64,000 nucleotides of DNA, from positions 205,165 to 269,164 of the forward strand of contig NW_018408547.1 of assembly GCF_002113885.1 (NCBI RefSeq). The letters are read 5' to 3'. Shown piece after piece: positions 4,931 to 28,610 of this stretch. The notes under the pieces were generated by a model. The model had not been told where the DNA came from, ran no database searches, and saw nothing but the letters and a program-made list of their open reading frames with translations. Origin of the DNA: Mizuhopecten yessoensis (taxonomy: Eukaryota). Both the position numbers and the translations under genes were made by a program. Every line of letters begins with the position of its first letter. Positions within the stretch are counted from its first letter, which is position 1.

Positions 4931-5119
4931 TCTAGCTCAGCGTCAATAGCAAGTCAAAAAACATGACACATACAGTGCTGTCGCCCTATAGGAGTTTTCA
5001 TTGATCTGTCAGGCCTTGTTTTCTGGGTCAAAGACAACACAAGTGATGATGTCCTCTGAAATAAATAATGACAACGATTAAAAAAGCAATTTTTACATAA
5101 AATATTATATGCATTACAT

Positions 5120-5373
5120 TTGATTGGTTTGGGGTAAAAAAAACCTGACCAATTACTAGGCCGATATATGTCCTCTTAAGATTAACAGTGGAGAGACATC
5201 TTTCTTAAAGGCTGTCAATATTAGCTTTACACTGCCATACGATGCAAACTAAAAGACAAAACCAGTCTACTTGTATCATACACGGTGGTGCATACTGAGC
5301 CTTTAATTTTGTTGTGGCATATTCCAGGGGTGCAGAGAACATAAATGAGAGTAGTCCCTGGAATTTGAGAATG
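5120..5373. mobile_element. Degraded partial copy of the MITE at 28611-28966
   Basis: Shares AAAAAAACCTGACCAAT, AAGATTA..GGAGAGAC and the right TIR GAGCCTTTAATTTTG...CATATTCCAGGGGTG with that element. Confidence 0.7.
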
Positions 5374-5546
5374 AACTCTGCGCAGAATGCAATTTAATTT
5401 ATTATGTTTTCATTGAATTTGACTATGAATTTAATTTATATAAATAAAAAAATTGTATTTGTTCTTTACTTTGAGGTAGATTTTCACTAAGTAGACAGCA
5501 AACAACCAGCTATCTTCAACATTGTGTCTTATCTGTTATTACTTCT

Positions 5547-5975
5547 GTAACAAAGGTCAATATTTTTTCAATGCCTCCACTAGGAGTCAAACCCTAGACC
5601 TCTGGATCAATAGACTTATGCTCTACCGAATGAGCTAAAGAGAAATTCTCCCCAACTGCTTTCTACCGTCAGTCCGTAGGAAGCATCTAGTATTTTACCA
5701 GGGTGACATGTACTCCCCCTCTAGGAAAGAACTTGTCCCAAGTTTTCCAGGGATCATATTGTGATTCTTGTAAAAGTATTGTTGAGTGTATTTGTCAATA
5801 TTACCTGGACCCCAATGTAACAGAGGTCAATCGTTATTTTTTTAATGCTTCTGCTTGGAGTCAAACCCAGGCATTAGTTAGTTTACTAGTCTTATGCTCT
5901 ATACCAAATGAGCTAAAGAGAAATTCTCCCTAGCCTAGTCGGTAGGAAGCAGCTAGTATTTTAACAGGGTCACAT
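5547..5975 (-). repeat. Two tandem tRNA-derived repeat units (tRNA pseudogene or SINE-like)
   Basis: Minus strand TAGCTCATTCGGTAGAGCATAAG...GGTTTGACTCC (Pol III A and B boxes); units at about 5547-5710 and 5817-5975. Confidence 0.6.
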
Positions 5976-6588
5976 TTATTGGTGGCCACTATTCTAACAC
6001 AATACTGATCATACAAAATATAAAACAGCTTTAAATTATCTTGAAGAAATCCTATGAAAAACAGGAAGATTTTCTGCTGTCATGAGTCCACCATTTCTTA
6101 GAGTTTAATAGGCAAATAAAAAGATAACAATACCACAATGTTTATTTCATATTATTACAATTTCAATGACAACATTCTTTAACTGACCTTTGGATTCTGA
6201 TTTATTCCCCTATGAAACCTGAGCAATAGCTAGTCAGCTGACTGGGGTCGGCCAAATTCCTGCAGCATACGCAGTATGTAGAGTTTTGTTATTTCTATTA
6301 CAATCACACCGACTTATAAATCATACATATAGGGACTTTCTTATTTACTGAAATACTTTGAACAATGGAAGTGCTACAATTTCGTTAGTTTCTGTGCATG
6401 ATCAGCATGTCGATATGATTAGCTTCGGCCCACTCGTTTCGCGGATTCACGCATCACTCCATCAGGCCTTCAGCTGTCAGTAGCCGTTCTATGTGAAGAG
6501 AGTCAAACATGCGTGGAATTCACATATATATTTCACTTTGTTGTTAATTAACAACAAGATTAAACAAAATGTCATGTAGTTTAGTTAC

Positions 6589-6765
6589 CCGCCTGTGGGG
6601 ATGTCACTTAATTAGCTTCAAACGGCAGACATTCCTCGATGTAAACAACGTTTTAGTTTTCCGGAAGTGAATTTATTGGTCAAAGGTCAAAGAGAAACGG
6701 AAATACACACCTTTTTCCCGCCAAACTTCAACACAGTCCATGGCAATCTCTACCCAGAGTTGTCG
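6589..6765 (-). promoter_or_regulatory. Probable PANK4 non-coding first exon and core promoter
   Basis: Donor GGCGG-gtaact at 6588; ETS motif CCGGAAGTG at 6661; local CpG enrichment. Confidence 0.4.
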
Positions 6766-6810
6766 TTCCTTTTCAATCACACACACAATGGAGATTGAGT
6801 CTATGGTTCT

Positions 6811-6879
6811 TTAGTCTCGTTCAATCAGACTATTGTTGACTGCGTCTGGTCAGGTCTATGGTCTGGTTGAACGAGGCCA
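6811..6879. mobile_element. Tiny hairpin MITE-like element
   Basis: CTCGTTCAATCAGAC...GTCTGGTTGAACGAG inverted repeat. Confidence 0.5.
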
Positions 6880-7929
6880 CGATTCCTTGTACCGTTAGCC
6901 AACATGGGCTGTGTATTTCATCTTTCGATGTATACAGTCACAGATAACTTATTGCGTACGTACGCGTCAATGCATTAAGAACTTATTCATTTTTTGTGAT
7001 TTTATATAAATTTTTAACTGAACATGTCCCTTTAGAAAGAGAAGTTTTCTGCAATTTCTTTTTCAATCACGGTTTTATTTCTAAAATTATCTTGTTTTGT
7101 TACTGGAAACCCGTTTTAGACTATTTAAAATGTTTCTGAAATTTGTATATATATTTTTTCTGTGTGTAAGCGACTACTATAGATCAGCTAGGCCCTTTCG
7201 CGTATCCGGCTGACCGCTCAACCGGTTTCTATGGAACGCAAAATTAACATCATATATATCAAATATTTACACAGGGGGAAAAAAAGCCCGGGCTTACACA
7301 TAAAAAATCTGTGTGTGCCATTGTCAAAAAAGTAGCCACTGAAACAAAACAAAAGATGACACCATGTTATCAAGATATCTTAATTGACCTTTGTATTAAT
7401 TATTTACTAAACGCTTATAATACTCTAATATGTCATGGTCGTCTATTACTTCCAATCCGGTATTTTCGGTGTTTCAGTATGTTGACAGAAGTAAATTTTC
7501 AAAATGAAGAAGGCTTCCAATATTTAAAAATATACCTTCTTCAAGACAAAATCACGTAATACTGATTCAGTTCCTGCCACGACGTCGGTTACTAAAAATC
7601 CGGTACATGCAAATATTGCTGATAATCTAACAAGTCCATCCACAGGCCCAAGCAGCACACAGCATAGCACGTGCTTGGACCCTCCAAATCCAAGTATCAC
7701 ACAGCATAGCACGTGCTTGGACCCTCCAAATCCAAGAAAGATACTCCAGCAAGGACCATGGTACATTGACATGGGATTTAAATCCCAGCAAGAAATCAAT
7801 TCAGAACAATTGTCCACAATCTATTGACGACACCGTCTCAGTGACAGAGCGTGGACACATTTGAATTTCCTTCAATGTAGTTAAGACAGTCTTGAGTTTA
7901 ACGATATTGTCGATAGAAACTACAAGAAT

Positions 7930-8576
7930 TTATTTTTTCTAATCAGATGATCGGATGAAGACTTCTTATACATTCTCGCAGGGAAAATATGAATTAGCAT
8001 TATTGTAAAAGTGGGACCCAGACCTTTCTCCGTCATGGTATTTAGGCTGGTTAGATAGAAAATAAACTTCTGGTACGTAGCATGACTGAAAAAATAGGAT
8101 AGATTGGTCGGGATTTATATACTTTTCTCCCACAATCATTATAGGTTTCCTCACTCCCGATTCATTGGATAAACATGCTAGGAGTTGGTAAACATTTTTG
8201 GTTACCCACTAGTGAGTAACACCCTCAACCTGATTTCATTGGTCATTTTTTTACTTATGACGTCACGTAACAATGCTTTGCGACGTCATCTTCCATTGTG
8301 ACGTCATGATTCACGGCAATTGTTTCCACCATCGGATGCATACATAGTGTACCTTCAAGGGAAACATGACTTTCCAGATAAAATATGAACATTATTGGAG
8401 AAAAAGGATCCCAAACTCGTGATGGTAGAATATCATGTTTATCTAACTCTCGTTAGTTAATTTTAAAATTGTAAAAGACACTCGGGAAACTTCGTGTCTT
8501 TATACAATTTGAAAATTAACTAACTCGAGTTAGATAAACATGATAACCAACCATCACTCGTTGGGGAACCTCTATA
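7930..8576 (+). mobile_element. Non-autonomous element with long terminal hairpin (8405-8571); class uncertain, possibly Crypton-like
   Basis: About 165-bp palindrome ending in CTCTATATA; body 8125-8325 matches 47640-47845 in reverse complement. Confidence 0.65.
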
Positions 8577-9159
8577 TAACTTATAGAACTTTACATTATA
8601 TATTTTTCTCCTTCTGTTTTGAGGGGCTACTTTATTTGATTTTATGAGCTGCTTTTATTAACGTACTCAAAATGCGTCTGATAAGCAATGTCTAAAATCA
8701 TGATTAGAAAAGTATTTGATTCTATATATGACTATAGTTTAGCGGAAGTCGTTTCACTTTATATTTTTTACTGAATAGTACAAAGGCAAATCAAGACCGT
8801 CTTTCCTCGCTAGAAATGCTACATGTCCACAGAGAATTTTTTATCAATAACACAAAAACAAAAGGAAAGTGTCTTTTATCAAGAAGTTTCTAGCTGTAAG
8901 CTGTAAATTGCATGTTGGTTGGGCACGTGTAGTGTAAAATAAACATAATAGCGAATATGAGTATTGTGATGTTCTTTAATTCAGCGCATTTTACACTAAA
9001 ATGTGTCTTTAAATAACTGTCTCGGATAACAATTTGAATGCCTCGTAAAATCTTAAAAGTCATTTTCCGTCGGGGGGCTCCGCCCCCCTGAGCCCCCCAC
9101 CTGGGCTTACACATATCGATGGGCCTAGCTACGCCCTTGTTTTGTTATACATAACAAAT

Positions 9160-10205
9160 CATTTAAAGATTTAAACATATATTGACCACTGTGACCTTGA
9201 ATATGGGCGAAGGTCATTCATTTGGTAGTCCTTCATCCCAGCATGTTAATGGCCAAATATCATGCACCATTGGGCTTTTGCTTATTAAGAAGAAATCGTT
9301 TAAATGTTTTTAACATATTTGACCTGTGACCTTGAATATATGTCAAGGTCATTTATTTGAACAAACTTTGTAGCCCTTCATCCCAGCATGCTACTAGCCA
9401 AATATCATTACCCTAGGCCTCTTGGTTATTCAAAAGAAGTTATTGTAAAGGTTTTTAACATAATCAACCCTTGTGACCTTGAATAAACAGTAAGTCAAGG
9501 TCATTCATTTGAACAAACTTGATAGTCCTTCATCCGAGCATATTACTGGCAAAATATCATCACCTGATACATCTTGGTTATTCAGAAGAAGTTGTCAAAA
9601 GGTTTTTTATTTGGACAAACTTGGCAGTACTTTATTCCAGCATGCTAATGGCCAAATATATCATCATCAACCTAGGCATTTTGGTTATTCAGAAGAAGTT
9701 GTATCACAGGTTCAAACATATTTGACCCCTATGACCTTGAATATAAGTCAAGTTCATTCATTTGAACAAACTTGGTAGTCCTTCATCCTAGCATGCAACA
9801 GACCGAATATCAGTACCCTGGACCTTTTGGTTATTGAGAAATCGTTTGAAGATTTTACATTTGACCCATGTGACCTTTAAAGTGGATCAATGTCATTCAT
9901 TTGAACAAACTTGGCAGTCCTTCATCCCAGCATGCTACAGGCCCAATATCAGTATCCTTGGCCTCTTGGTTATTGAGGAGAAGTCGTAAGAAGATTTTAA
10001 GACATTTGACCCCTGTGACCTTGAAAGTCGGCAAGGTCATTCATTTGAACAAACTTTGTAGCCCATAATCCCAGCATGCTGCAGGCCCAATATCAGTACC
10101 CTGGGATTTTTGGTTATTGAGAAGAAGTTGTTTAAAGTAAAATATTGACGCCGGACGACGGACGCTGTGCCATGGCATAAGCCCACTTGCCCTTTGCCCT
10201 TTAAA
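9160..10205. mobile_element. HINE/Helentron-type element with ~130-bp internal satellite
   Basis: Repeated TGACCTTGAA...AAGGTCATTCATTTGAACAAACTTGGTAGTCCTTCATCCCAGCATG units; GACG microsatellite; terminal CATGGCATAAGCCCACTTGCCC. Confidence 0.8.
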
Positions 10206-24430: not shown

Positions 24431-25038
24431 CTAAGGTGATATGACAAAAGAAGCACATCCTGCACCTCACAACAATGAAGAGGAAATACACATTTACTGT
24501 TACATTATATTGCTGTAGTAAAATGATGCACCAACCAATCCAATATTTGAACACATACATGTTTTAAATAAAACAAAACATTTATATATACATATAAAAT
24601 GTGGAAATTTAACATTGGAATATCAGGTTTATTAAGTGTTTGGTCCACAACAAAAAAAGCACCTGTGTTGCCCCCAGATTGCTCAACCTTATCTTAACTT
24701 AAGAAACTCCAAATTAATTTGGCAAAATTTTGCCCCCATTCTCAAATAGATTTATACTTTTTTTCTTGAATGTGATACAGGAAATATTCAAAAATCTGAA
24801 ATCTATAACTTATTTTTGTATATTTTGTTTCTAGTAGAGATTGTATTTCCATAACTACTAGTAGTATCAAGAAAAAATAACAAATAAAAATTTGTGTATT
24901 TGATATAAAAACTAAATTTCAAAGATACATAAAGTGTAAACTGAAAACCAGGCACACTTGTATCATTTTTAAATTGAGTAGCAGGTGCAACAATACATTT
25001 AACACATAACAAGTTTCACATGTATTCATCACATAACC

Positions 25039-25667
25039 TTACATCAACCGCCCTATGAGAGTACCGAACGAAATAAATATGATACACATGAACAGTTCCT
25101 CTTTATAACAAAGTTCTGAAAGCTTTAAATCTTTTGATTTGGCAAATTTATAGAGTAGATATAATGGAATAAAAACATGTAACAGATCGGGAATCATGAG
25201 TCCGATATTCCTGGCATTCTGGAAATGAGATCCTTTGCCGTAAACCACATGTTGTATAAACTGGTCGGAACCTTCCACCGATATGTGCATTAGGTTGATG
25301 CTAACTATTGCTAGTATCTTCCAGGATACTATTTCATTACGATTATCGCATAAATTCAACACGAGGCACGTAGCGATGACTTCTGTGATGGTGAACAGCA
25401 TATGATGTTTGTAGTAATCGTAAAAGTCCTCGTTGTAGTAACTGAAGTACGACCACCAGGAGTAATAGTGGGGATACAGGTTCGCAACATACAAAGCGAA
25501 CATAGCAGGTCGCAGATTTCTCCGACGAATCAGTGGAATGAGGTACTTAATGCTTTCATACGCCAGGAGGACGAAGATCACGGTGAACAGCCAAATCCGC
25601 ATTGTTTGCCAGGTGGCGTTGAAGTATACATGTTTGTAAGTTGTTGGCCCTTGATCCTCATATTGAC
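25039..25667 (-). CDS. Uncharacterised multi-pass membrane protein, last coding exon
   Basis: (G)QYEDQGPTTYKHVYFNATWQTMRIWLFTVIF...GRLM*; tttag acceptor, phase 1. Confidence 0.88.
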
Positions 25668-25741
25668 CTAAAAATTACATATAAATAAAATAAAAAAAGA
25701 TATAAACGATGGAGCCTCAACATCTGGATTCCGTAGTTTTA

Positions 25742-25794
25742 TTACCGGTTTACATGTTTCGGCTAGCTAGGCTTGCCATCATCAGAACCAATAA
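25742..25794 (-). ncRNA. Minimal type I hammerhead ribozyme in a Penelope-like pLTR remnant
   Basis: UUAUUGGUU-CUGAUGA-U-GGC...GCC-GAAA-CAUGUA-AACCGGUAA; AAUAAA follows directly. Confidence 0.8.
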
Positions 25795-26338
25795 AAGTGA
25801 GAGTTTTATTGAGAAAAATATCAATAAAACATTTTCGTTTTAAATGTATTAAACATTACTTTCTTCGGAGGATTGTTTGTTAATTAAAATGCCTTGTTCG
25901 TGTATAAATTAATCTGGCACATTTGCTGTGAGTTAAATTCTGACAGGTTTTGAAATTAGATTTGCATATCAGTAATGTAAGTATGTAATCATAAATAATA
26001 CCAGTTCCTATTTTATAATTTATTTATATTTAAAACGTTTTGCGAAGTGTTTTTGTAACTAGGAGATGAACCAAATAAAAGAGCAACCAGGTGCAGCATA
26101 CCCCCCCCCCCCCATAAAAAAAACTACATTCAGGATTTCTACTGACCCATCATGGATTTGTGTTTGAGCAGAAAACTGTACAATCAGTTTTACAATAATT
26201 TTATGTGGACATGCTACCTATTCTCTGTATACAAAATGCAGACTTTGTACAATCATCAATATAACTAGGAACACTAAAGACTTGTGGAGTATATATATAT
26301 AGGACTATGTATAGAATAAAAACATTTTTTTCAGATCG

Positions 26339-26379
26339 TCCGCTAGGCCTTTCTGCCTTCTAGGGCTTCTTCAGGCGGA
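26339..26379 (-). ncRNA. Minimal type I hammerhead motif inside a TSD-flanked insert
   Basis: UCCGC-CUGAAGA-A-GCC-CUAGAA-GGC-A-GAAA-GGCCUA-GCGGA; 21-bp direct repeat at 26296-26316 and 26390-26410. Confidence 0.72.
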
Positions 26380-26419
26380 TTCATAGGACTATATAGGACT
26401 ATGTATAGAAGGGCTACTT

Positions 26420-26990
26420 TTAAACCAAGTATGAAGTTTGTATGTCCATACATTTTAAGTTATCATTATCATTCAGAGAAGCAAAATTATCTATTTGGCA
26501 ATGGTAACCTTGAACTTTGACTGACTGCCCCTTAAACCAATAGGCTTAGTCACAATCAATAGGGAACCCAAAACCGGAAGTTTGAACTTTGTATAGTAAT
26601 ACATTCTTATGTTATTATTGGCACATTTTCAACTTTGTATATCAAGTAATCTTCTGGACAAGCCCTACCCAGCAGAATTCTATTTTTAGCAACAGTGACC
26701 CTGAACTCTGGGGCCCCAAGCCCAAAATCTGCAGGGTTCTTTGCATCCTCTTGGGCTACCACAAACCAAGTTTGAGGTTTGTGTGATCAAACATTCTCAA
26801 GTTATTATCTGGACAAGCCCTACCAAGCAGAATACTACTTTTAGCAACAGTGACCTTGACTTCTCCGACACCATGCCCAAAATGGATCGGGTTCTTTGTA
26901 TCCACTAGGGCAAACCAAACACCAAGTTTGATCTTTGTATGATCAATCATTCTCAAGTTATTATCCAGACAAATACTATGGACAGATGGA
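26420..26990. mobile_element. HINE-type satellite element, degraded
   Basis: Repeated AGCAACAGTGACC(T/C)TGA...CCAAGTTTGA...TTCTCAAGTTATTATC units. Confidence 0.65.
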
Positions 26991-27449
26991 TTTAGATCTT
27001 CTCAATGGAACCTTATTGTAATACAATAAACTTTCATTTGTGTTAGTTGAGATTAGAAAGTTTCTAGAGGCATGAAGATTTCCAAAAATGGTACTAGTGT
27101 ATTTGGCTTTAACATCCTGACAACGAAGCTAAATCACGTTTGAGACATATCTATATTTGAATATCTTAAGAAGTTTGATAAAAAAATATTTTTAGAAATG
27201 AATTTAGAGACGATTTTTTAAAAATTATATTGCCTTTGCCTTTGTAGCTTAATTTGTGACATATATTTATAGTAACCATGGTCATAACCCTGACACATTA
27301 ACTGAATTTAACTCCTCATTCTTATACTTGTGGAACTAATCACTTTCATCAGCATAAGTTTATTGTTCTGGTGTGGAGTTGTCCCCCTTTGACCAATAAC
27401 AACATTTACAATTTTTTGTGCACTGAAAACATTGCAAAAATTTTAATGT

Positions 27450-27895
27450 AACACGTGTGCATTGTGTAAAACTCACCTCTGAATACAGTATCGAAGCACG
27501 AACAAACGTGTGTATTGTGTAAAACCCACCTCTGAATACAGTATTGAAGCACGAACAAACGTGTGTATTGTGTAAAACTCACCTCTGAATACAGTATCGA
27601 AGCACGAACAAATGTGTGTATTATGTAAAACTCACCTCTGAATACAGTATCGAAGCACGAACAAACGTGTATTGTGTAAAACTCACCTCTGAATACAGTA
27701 TCGAAGAACGAACAAACGTGTATTGTGTAAAACTCACCTCTGAATACAGTACGAAGCACGAACAAGCGTGTGTATTTTGTAAAACTCACCTCTGAATACA
27801 GTATCGAAGCACGAACAAATGTGTGTATTGTGTAAAACTCACCTCTGAATACAGTATCGAAGCATGAACAAGCGTGTGTATTGTGTAAAACTCAC
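27450..27895 (-). repeat. 51-53 bp tandem array derived from an exon 3' end plus donor
   Basis: Eight extra copies of TTGTTCGTGCTTCGATACTGTATTCAGAG-GTGAGTTTTACACAATACACAC. Confidence 0.95.
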
Positions 27896-27985
27896 CTCTG
27901 AATACAGTATCGAAGCACGAACAAGTACACTTGTTCCTGTCCACCTTCCCTTTTCCTGGCACCCAGATTTTTAGATGGATTATAC
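27896..27985 (-). CDS. Uncharacterised membrane protein, coding exon 2
   Basis: (G)IIHLKIWVPGKGKVDRNKCTCSCFDTVFR; ttcag acceptor, gtgagt donor; 90 nt, phase 1-1. Confidence 0.85.
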
Positions 27986-28610
27986 CTGAAAAACATTTGT
28001 TATAGAAATTGTAATAAATATTTCTTTTGGCATGACGAGAAAAGATTGTATACCCTTAACTCAAACTGTTACATATTATAATACAACTTTGCCCTTTCTA
28101 CAGAACACTTTATCATGCCATGAAATAGCCGACACTTCATAGGGTGACCATGATAGAGAATGGGCAACAAGATATATATAGGAAAGTATATTCAGCATTA
28201 GTCTGAATAGCAGGTTAAATACTCCAGTTTACCAATACTTCTCTTAGAGGCCTTTTAAAGGGTATGCAAAAGTAGACTAAATATAATCAGTCCAAAGGTG
28301 ACTTTTCCATGTAAATGGTAAAATATTAATATATAAACAAACTAGCAAGGAAGGTTTTCTAGCACTTTCATCGTATCTTCGTATTGTAACTGATACCCGA
28401 CCAGTATCATCATTCTTCTAACCCGATGCCCAGGATTAGTAGATTTAAAAAAAGGTTTTTGAAGATTTTCAAATATTTACTTTGAAAATATAGCTCCAGT
28501 TAACAGAATTTTGCAAACTCTGCCTACCAACAGTGAGACTCGCACTCGAAAAATGAAATGTTACAACAGAGAAGTGACCGTGTAAGCAAATAGACATTCG
28601 TTCTAGCTGT

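What the first reader, a model, noticed from the sequence alone, without database searches (positions are those of the whole stretch)
25742..25794. Intact sense-strand intronic hammerhead about 80 nt upstream of a splice acceptor
Seen: complete core CUGAUGA(U)/GAAA, GUA cleavage triplet (cut between 25751 and 25750), 9-bp stem I with two G-U pairs, stem II GGC/GCC, palindromic helix III ACAUGU, then AAUAAA. It sits just upstream of the branch/acceptor region of the last exon (25667). Cleavage or premature polyadenylation could compete with splicing (inference).
Basis: partly seen in the sequence, partly recalled or inferred. Interest (0 to 1): 0.78.

Follow-up and report, generated by a model that had tools for sequence, protein, structure and literature searches.

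The report
Penelope-type minimal hammerhead relic in intron
The hammerhead ribozyme motif is really there, but it is one decaying copy of a short repeat shed by a Penelope-like retrotransposon, a known kind of ribozyme that barely cuts as a single copy, and the host intron is spliced normally.

Summary
On the minus strand at 25742-25794 there is a complete type-I hammerhead core. It has a 9-bp helix I, a 7-bp helix II with one A.A mismatch, one extra U between A9 and G10.1, and a 2-bp palindromic helix III. The GUA cleavage site lies 83 nt upstream of a 3' splice site that RNA reads confirm.

It is not a gene-specific device. The motif sits in a ~94-nt repeat unit (25695-25788). My covariance model matched 146 of the 150 candidates scored in this 988-Mb genome, as solo copies, head-to-head inverted pairs and tandem arrays. 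Copies of a related subfamily (74-79% identical to this one) lie 0.5-0.9 kb downstream of reverse-transcriptase/GIY-YIG ORFs on the same strand.

Its anatomy matches point by point the "min-HHR" of Penelope-like elements (Cervera & de la Peña 2014). Those authors detected no self-cleavage from single copies in vitro. Only 12 of 34 aligned copies keep the core, and this copy is the one closest to the consensus.

RNA-seq shows clean splicing, equal exon depth on both sides, essentially no intronic reads and no RNA ends at the site. No second copy lies in the window to form a dimer.

Verdict: a transposon relic and a new member of a known kind. The scan has noted Penelope/hammerhead relics elsewhere in this genome.

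The parts
25695..25788 (-). Repeat unit of about 94 nt: the 3'-terminal / pseudo-LTR fragment of a Penelope-like element family. It carries the hammerhead and the AAUAAA.
   Evidence: BLAST and alignment of 45 genomic copies share exactly this span. Model R1 scores this copy 82.1 bits.
25786..25794 (-). Helix I, 5' strand (UUAUUGGUU). Only about 25786-25790 is part of the repeat; 25791-25794 is local flank.
   Evidence: In the family alignment only the three inner pairs are conserved, and the outer pairs sit at chance level.
25779..25785 (-). Catalytic box CUGAUGA (C3-A9).
   Evidence: Nearly invariant in the family alignment.
25778..25778 (-). Unpaired extra nucleotide (U) between A9 and G10.1. 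The family consensus has C, here changed to T within a CpG.
   Evidence: This is a hallmark of PLE min-HHRs (PMC4209133).
25761..25777 (-). Helix II hairpin: 7 bp (GGCAAGC / GCUAGCC) with one A.A mismatch and a CUA loop. It includes the G10.1-C11.1 pair.
   Evidence: 81.6% of cells are paired across the family, and the subfamily next to the RT/GIY-YIG ORFs has two compensatory pair changes (GGUUGGC/GCCAACC).
25751..25760 (-). GAAA box (G12-A15.1), the minimal palindromic helix III (C15.2, loop AU, G16.2, U16.1) and A17. The predicted cut lies between 25751 and 25750.
   Evidence: Helix III pairs are kept in about 90% of copies.
25742..25750 (-). Helix I, 3' strand (AACCGGUAA).
25738..25743 (-). 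AAUAAA hexamer. It is a near-invariant part of the repeat consensus, not a feature specific to this gene.
   Evidence: No read ends and no intronic coverage downstream of it.
25668..27895 (-). Host intron of 2,228 nt with GT..AG ends. It holds the repeat copy.
   Evidence: Splice joint 25665>27894 (cut +2, CT..AC on the + strand) in 4 reads of X21, 18 reads of X22 and one contig of X1.
25042..25667 (-). Last coding exon of the host gene: 207 codons, then a stop. It encodes a multi-pass membrane protein of unknown family.
   Evidence: Translation. No Pfam family. The nearest Atlas clusters are 'hypothetical protein'. RNA depth is about 25x in X22.

Best explanation
This is a solo, 5'-truncated copy (~94 nt, 25695-25788, minus strand) of the 3'/pseudo-LTR region of a Penelope-like retrotransposon (PLE) family. 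It inserted in sense orientation into the last intron of a host gene. The unit carries the PLE-type minimal type-I hammerhead ('min-HHR'). In the element's own life cycle that ribozyme is thought to process tandem or multimeric PLE transcripts. It would do so by pairing two copies through the palindromic helix III (a double hammerhead), possibly helped by the PLE protein. Those steps come from the literature; they were not shown here. As a lone copy in this intron it has no stable helix III and no partner. It is predicted to misfold, so it should be essentially inert. The core is intact because this copy is among the least decayed, not because the host selects for it. The host intron is removed normally.
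For: Repeat family: the DNA search gives 58 matches, and model R1 matches 146 of the 150 candidates scored. There are solo copies, head-to-head inverted pairs and tandem arrays. The family consensus itself carries CUGAUGA, an extra nucleotide, a 7-bp helix II, GAAA, CAUGUA and AACCG.

PLE link: copies of a subfamily 74-79% identical to the window copy lie on the same strand downstream of ORFs. At C76692 the ORFs have Pfam RVT_1 and GIY-YIG. At C4844 an 87%-identical endonuclease ORF has Pfam GIY-YIG.

The anatomy equals the published min-HHR hallmarks (PMC4209133): helix II of 7-8 bp, helix I of 4-5 bp, a nucleotide between 9 and 10.1, G10.1-C11.1, and palindromic 15.2-16.2. That paper also describes mostly single motifs or nearby pairs on opposite strands.

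Decay pattern: 12 of 34 copies keep the core. The window copy is the closest to consensus, at 92.7%.

Inertness: the hammerhead-compatible fold scores -12.8 against an MFE of -17.0 kcal/mol, about 0.08% of the ensemble. There is no second copy in the window. Single min-HHRs gave no detectable cleavage in vitro. The Anolis PLE hammerhead cut only when the PLE protein was added, and no RNA-seq ends were found at its site (PMC11167929).

RNA reads: the intron is spliced. Exon depth is about 25x on both sides in X22. Intron bins are near zero, and no start or end pile-ups appear.
Against: The ORF link was shown for a sister subfamily, not for the window copy's own subfamily. No PLE ORF remnant lies beside the window copy. 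Most copies begin at nearly the same 5' position, which is not what random 5' truncation gives. Covariation support is modest: the two compensatory pairs come from one lineage, and the overall paired fraction is no better than shuffles. The 9-bp helix I of this copy is unusually long for the family, so some residual activity cannot be excluded. Intron read depth was too low to see rare cleavage products. No cleavage assay was done.
Confidence: 0.85

Rival explanations
1. The hammerhead, or its AAUAAA, is a working cis-regulatory device of the host gene. Co-transcriptional self-cleavage or intronic polyadenylation would compete with splicing of the last intron.
For: The core is fully intact and in sense, 83 nt from the acceptor, with a 9-bp helix I. 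It is the best-preserved copy of the family.
Against: The motif and the AAUAAA are inherited family features present in dozens of unrelated loci. There is no stable helix III and no partner copy. The active fold is about 0.08% of the ensemble. The flanking exons have equal depth, intron depth is about zero, and no read ends pile up. Published monomeric min-HHRs were inactive.
Confidence: 0.05
2. The repeat is a non-PLE element, such as a MITE or foldback DNA transposon whose arms are the ~95-nt unit, or a satellite seed. Its hammerhead likeness would then be a coincidence of the family consensus.
For: Many copies are head-to-head inverted pairs, most have a fixed 5' boundary, and there are 63-nt tandem arrays. 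No Rfam hammerhead hit.
Against: Two independent loci place the unit downstream of RT/GIY-YIG ORFs on the same strand. By my rough estimate chance would give about 0.02 such cases among 45 copies. Inverted 5'-truncated partners and partial tandems are the described PLE insertion architecture (PMC8557442). The consensus meets every hallmark of the PLE min-HHR that is not a core position: the extra nucleotide, G10.1-C11.1, the long helix II and the palindromic helix III.
Confidence: 0.07
3. A chance match to the short hammerhead consensus in AT-rich intron sequence.
For: The relaxed descriptor is expected about 0.02 times per 64 kb. That is hundreds of times per genome of this size.
Against: The same motif, in the same register, is in the consensus of a family with at least 146 members. 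It therefore arose once in the element, not by chance at this locus.
Confidence: 0.02

Closest known systems
Minimal hammerheads (min-HHR) of metazoan Penelope-like elements (Cervera & de la Peña 2014, PMC4209133)
   Same: Type-I topology. Long helix II (7 bp). A short family-level helix I. An unpaired nucleotide between A9 and G10.1. The G10.1-C11.1 pair. A palindromic, minimal helix III. Occurrence as many divergent solo copies, inverted pairs and partial tandems, linked to RT/GIY-YIG elements.
   Different: This copy has a 2-bp helix III with a 2-nt loop, rather than none. That matches the 'small palindromic helix III' variants the paper reports in flies, rotifers, shrimps and mosquitoes. 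Its helix I is extended to 9 bp by flank sequence. This family in this genome is, as far as I could check, not described.
Metazoan non-LTR retrozymes (Cervera & de la Peña 2020, PMC7229834; Li et al. 2026 preprint, 10.64898/2026.07.22.740005)
   Same: Type-I hammerheads with a weak palindromic helix III that need dimers. Non-autonomous relatives of PLE pseudo-LTRs. The family here also forms tandem arrays.
   Different: By the cited abstract, retrozymes are tandem repeats expressed as abundant linear and circular RNAs of about 170-400 nt. This copy is solo and not detectably expressed. The family's array units are only 63 nt, and all carry U in place of C3.
Canonical type-I hammerheads (Rfam RF00163), as in Schistosoma and newt repeats, present in this genome
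   Same: The same catalytic core and a palindromic helix III. This genome has such motifs scoring 33-35 bits with CAGCUG helix III.
   Different: The window motif gets no RF00163 score. It has the extra nucleotide, a 7-bp helix II, and no recognisable loop-loop contact between helices I and II.
Conserved intronic hammerheads of amniotes (HH9/HH10, Rfam RF02275/RF02277)
   Same: An intronic, sense-strand type-I hammerhead.
   Different: From established knowledge, those are single-copy, conserved at orthologous introns, and have a stable helix III that allows monomeric cleavage. This one is a repeat copy without a stable helix III and with no Rfam match. Orthology could not be tested.

Membership tests
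PLE min-HHR | Complete hammerhead core: C3-A9 box, G12-A14, A15.1-U16.1 and H17 | tested here: met
   CUGAUGA at 25785-25779, GAAA at 25760-25757, U16.1 at 25752, A17 at 25751.
PLE min-HHR | [quoted passage not shown] | tested here: met
   U at 25778. In the alignment a nucleotide (mostly C or U) fills this column in all 34 copies. The feature is as described in PMC4209133.
PLE min-HHR | G10.1-C11.1 pair and a long helix II (7-8 bp) | tested here: met
   G25777-C25761. The helix is 7 bp with one A.A mismatch in this copy and a perfect 7 bp in the consensus.
PLE min-HHR | [quoted passage not shown] | tested here: met
   Only the three inner pairs and pair 5 are kept across the family. The outer pairs sit at chance level. 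This copy reaches 9 bp through flank sequence.
PLE min-HHR | Palindromic 15.2-16.2 and loop 3, allowing a dimeric helix III | tested here: met
   ACAUGU at 25757-25752. The pairs are kept in about 90% of copies.
PLE min-HHR | Consensus families with covariation and compensatory changes | tested here: inconclusive
   Two helix II pairs show double changes (C-G to U-A, A-U to G-C), but in one subfamily only. The covariation score was reached by 9 of 500 shuffles, and the paired fraction is not above shuffles.
PLE min-HHR | Located in the pseudo-LTR / 3' region of an RT + GIY-YIG element | tested here: met
   Shown for a sister subfamily, 74-79% identical. At C76692, RVT_1 and GIY-YIG ORFs are followed by the unit about 0.9 kb downstream on the same strand. 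At C4844, a GIY-YIG ORF is followed by two units. Not shown for the window copy's own subfamily.
PLE min-HHR | Self-cleavage, weak and as a dimer or with protein help | not testable with these tools
   This needs an in vitro transcription and cleavage assay. RNA reads show no ends at the site, but intron depth is about zero.
Rfam Hammerhead_1 (RF00163) and the other Rfam hammerhead models | Score at or above the family gathering threshold | tested here: not met
   No match at gathering thresholds on the whole window. No match at E<=10 on 25600-25950.
Non-LTR retrozyme | Tandem hammerhead-bearing monomers (RNAs of about 170-400 nt) expressed as abundant linear or circular RNA | tested here: not met
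   Single copy in the window. Read depth over the unit is about zero in three RNA runs. The family's arrays have 63-nt units with U3.
Conserved intronic hammerhead (HH9/HH10 type) | Single-copy motif kept at the orthologous intron across species, with a stable helix III | tested here: not met
   It is a multi-copy repeat, and helix III is 2 bp around a 2-nt loop. Orthologous introns could not be examined because no related genomes are available.

The most novel reading that the evidence does not exclude
Because flank sequence extends helix I to 9 bp and the core is untouched, this copy might keep slow, perhaps protein- or chaperone-assisted, self-cleavage in the nascent pre-mRNA. A transposon-borne ribozyme would then trim output of the host gene's last intron.
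Probability: 0.04. Interest if true: 0.5.

Novelty: new member of a known kind. Interest (0 to 1): 0.15.

Why it matters
It matters mostly as a calibration point. An "intact intronic hammerhead" in an invertebrate genome is most likely debris of a Penelope-like element, not a host regulatory ribozyme. Rfam models will not flag this class. The copy set gathered here includes solo copies, inverted pairs, arrays and two ORF-linked loci. It could seed a family model for annotating these relics genome-wide. If the lone copy did cleave, it would be a rare case of a transposon ribozyme acting on a host pre-mRNA.

Tried and rejected
- Rfam at gathering thresholds and at E<=10 gave no hammerhead hit.
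- A box C/D snoRNA reading of the UGAUGA box was dropped. The unit has no CUGA box D near its 3' end, and Rfam finds nothing.
- A Helitron or MITE reading of the hairpin and the inverted pairs is less likely than PLE, given the RT/GIY-YIG linkage.
- The upstream flank is not an inverted partial copy. Only a 7-nt AT-rich match (UUUUAUU to AAUAAAA) was seen by eye, so I treat it as chance.
- Searching the window and the 3-kb flanks of nine copies for PLE ORF remnants found none.
- The supplement of PMC4209133 is not held, so the published mollusc min-HHR sequences could not be compared.
- Host protein identity stayed open: Pfam gave no family and the Atlas gave only hypothetical proteins. I ran no further search on it.
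- The species was not established.

Full report
**Observation**

- Helix I is 25794-25786 (UUAUUGGUU) paired with 25750-25742 (AACCGGUAA), 9 bp with two U-G pairs.
- The CUGAUGA box is at 25785-25779, followed by one extra U at 25778.
- Helix II is 25777-25771 paired with 25767-25761. It extends beyond the reported GGC/GCC to 7 bp, with one A.A mismatch and a CUA loop.
- GAAA is at 25760-25757.
- Helix III is only A-U plus C-G around an AU loop, which gives the palindrome ACAUGU.
- The triplet is GUA, so the cut would fall between 25751 and 25750. AAUAAA is at 25743-25738.

My own relaxed min-HHR descriptor finds this and nothing else in the window. Dinucleotide shuffles give 0.023 hits per 64 kb for helix I of at least 5 bp, and none in 300 shuffles for 9 bp. 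In a genome of 988 Mb such a descriptor would still fire by chance hundreds of times. No Rfam hammerhead model scores the site, at gathering thresholds or at E<=10 on 351 nt. The motif alone therefore decides little.

**Context in the gene**

RNA reads from two raw RNA-seq runs and one contig set show a splice joint 25665>27894 (cut +2; CT..AC on the + strand). This is a minus-strand GT..AG intron, 25668-27895, with 22 reads plus a contig. The downstream exon (25667 down to a stop near 25042, 207 codons) encodes a multi-pass membrane protein. It has no Pfam family and only 'hypothetical protein' neighbours in the Atlas. [quoted passage not shown] is therefore correct.

**What the sequence is**

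A search of the window's own genome shows that 25788-25695 is a repeat unit of about 94 nt. There were 58 DNA matches. The alignment of 45 copies shows homology starting a few bases before CUGAUGA and ending about 55 nt after the cleavage site.

Copies occur in three layouts:
- Solo, like this one.
- As head-to-head inverted pairs (L017, L032, L025, L042, L021, L030, L094).
- In tandem: a 63-nt array of at least 22 units at C2617, in which every unit has U instead of C3.

A covariance model built from 34 copies matched 146 of the 150 candidates scored genome-wide. These included further arrays at C2575 and C3088. Only this one copy was found in the window.

The family consensus itself carries, in order, CUGAUGA, one extra nucleotide (C, often decayed to U within a CpG), a perfect 7-bp helix II with a CUA loop, GAAA, CAUGUA and AACCG. 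The hammerhead is thus ancestral to the family and did not arise at this locus.

**Link to Penelope-like elements**

A genome search with Pfam GIY-YIG gave a hit at C4844, about 0.6 kb upstream of two units I had already collected, on the same strand. That ORF has a GIY-YIG domain.

A second locus, at C76692, has ORFs with RVT_1 and GIY-YIG. The unit follows about 0.9 kb downstream on the same strand. Its endonuclease part is 87% identical to the C4844 ORF. These units belong to a subfamily 74-79% identical to the window copy.

RT followed by a C-terminal GIY-YIG is the canonical endonuclease-positive PLE. High 5' truncation, partial tandems and an adjacent inverted 5'-truncated copy are the described PLE insertion architecture, with hammerheads in the pseudo-LTRs (PMC8557442).

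**Comparison with the published class**

Cervera & de la Peña (PMC4209133) define the metazoan PLE "min-HHR" by these features:
- A larger helix II (7-8 bp).
- A conserved nucleotide between 9 and 10.1.
- A conserved G10.1-C11.1 pair.
- Palindromic 15.2-16.2 and loop 3.

They note that most motifs are solo, or are pairs 100-700 bp apart on opposite strands. All of this holds here.

Family-level pair counts:
- Helix II is paired in 81.6% of cells, with two compensatory double changes. Both are confined to the subfamily that lies next to the RT/GIY-YIG ORFs.
- Helix III is paired in about 90% of cells.
- In helix I only the inner three pairs and pair 5 are kept.
- The overall paired fraction is not above shuffles, so I rate covariation as inconclusive.

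The outer four pairs of this copy's 9-bp helix I come from local flank.

**Is this copy special?**

Twelve of 34 full-length copies keep every core position. The usual losses are at G12, which sits in a CpG. The window copy is the closest of all to the consensus, at 92.7%. An intact core is what one expects of a little-decayed copy and is no sign of host selection.

**Would it work here?**

The hammerhead-compatible secondary structure scores -12.8 kcal/mol against an MFE of -17.0. The MFE fold pairs A6-G8 with helix III nucleotides and pairs the extra U with G12. The active-compatible ensemble fraction is about 0.08%.

Helix III cannot form stably in a monomer, and there is no second copy in the window to build a double hammerhead. 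The authors of the class report no detectable cleavage for a single min-HHR and only weak cleavage for dimers and trimers. The Anolis PLE hammerhead cleaved only when the PLE protein was added. RNA-seq reads did not begin or end at its site (PMC11167929).

In the RNA reads laid here:
- Depth on the upstream exon (27896-27987, about 25x after correcting for the bin) equals depth on the downstream exon (about 25.7x) in X22.
- Intron bins free of other repeats are at zero.
- The bin holding the motif is fully explained by its 13 exonic bases.
- No start or end pile-ups are reported.

Unspliced, cleaved or prematurely polyadenylated forms are therefore at most a few percent. The depth is too low to exclude rare events.

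**Verdict**

This is a relic of a Penelope-like element carrying the known PLE-type minimal hammerhead: a new member of a known kind. The proposed competition with splicing is unsupported. Earlier notes of this scan on other DNA of the same genome (s1-545962, s1-572314) also describe PLE remnants with hammerhead relics. I used them only as leads.

**Limits**

- No cleavage assay was possible.
- No related genomes were available for an orthology test.
- The ORF link is shown for a sister subfamily only.
- The near-constant 5' boundary of the copies is not explained by simple 5' truncation.

Noticed in passing
L009 (G000:C2617:2391278-2393514): A tandem array of at least 22 units of 63 nt derived from the same hammerhead unit. 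Every unit has UUGAUGA (U in place of the essential C3, with no compensating A8). It looks like a satellite born from a ribozyme-dead pseudo-LTR piece.
   Followed up: partly
G000:C2575:141905-143640 and G000:C3088:125065-125974: Further tandem arrays matched by the family model R1, with hits about 48 nt apart at C2575 and about 41 nt apart in places at C3088. I did not inspect them.
   Followed up: no
Reads run on into unlike flanks, so the transcripts come from other copies of highly expressed families.
   Followed up: partly
window 27453-27924: A 53-nt tandem array (9 copies, 93% matches) repeats the end of the upstream exon plus its GT donor inside the same intron. RNA reads join from 27894/27896, the copy that ends the real exon (27896-27987).
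   Followed up: partly
L073 (G000:C4844:1315000-1324999), about 4955-9550: A PLE endonuclease ORF remnant is flanked by 54-nt arrays related to sequence just downstream of the ORF. Two hammerhead units lie 195 nt apart in a 97%-identical duplication, giving an [array + pLTR] x2 layout. Scan note s1-545962 describes a similar layout elsewhere in this genome.
   Followed up: partly
L011, L012, L013 (G000:C3881, C4406, C3195): Canonical type-I hammerheads (RF00163, 33-35 bits) with CUGAYGAG, a 3-4-bp helix II and a CAGCUG-type palindromic helix III. They are a different, retrozyme-like family in the same genome.
   Followed up: no
L027, and window 25786-25794: Two of the roughly ten copies that start with GGUU have a 9-bp helix I built partly from non-homologous upstream sequence. 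I estimate about 0.1 expected by chance. In L027 the upstream part is an inverted partial copy. This may be chance, or microhomology at PLE insertion junctions.
   Followed up: partly
window 24671-24741: Two reads of X22 and one contig of X1 skip 69 nt in the 3' untranslated part of the host gene (ends CC..TT, not intron-like). It is probably a length polymorphism.
   Followed up: no
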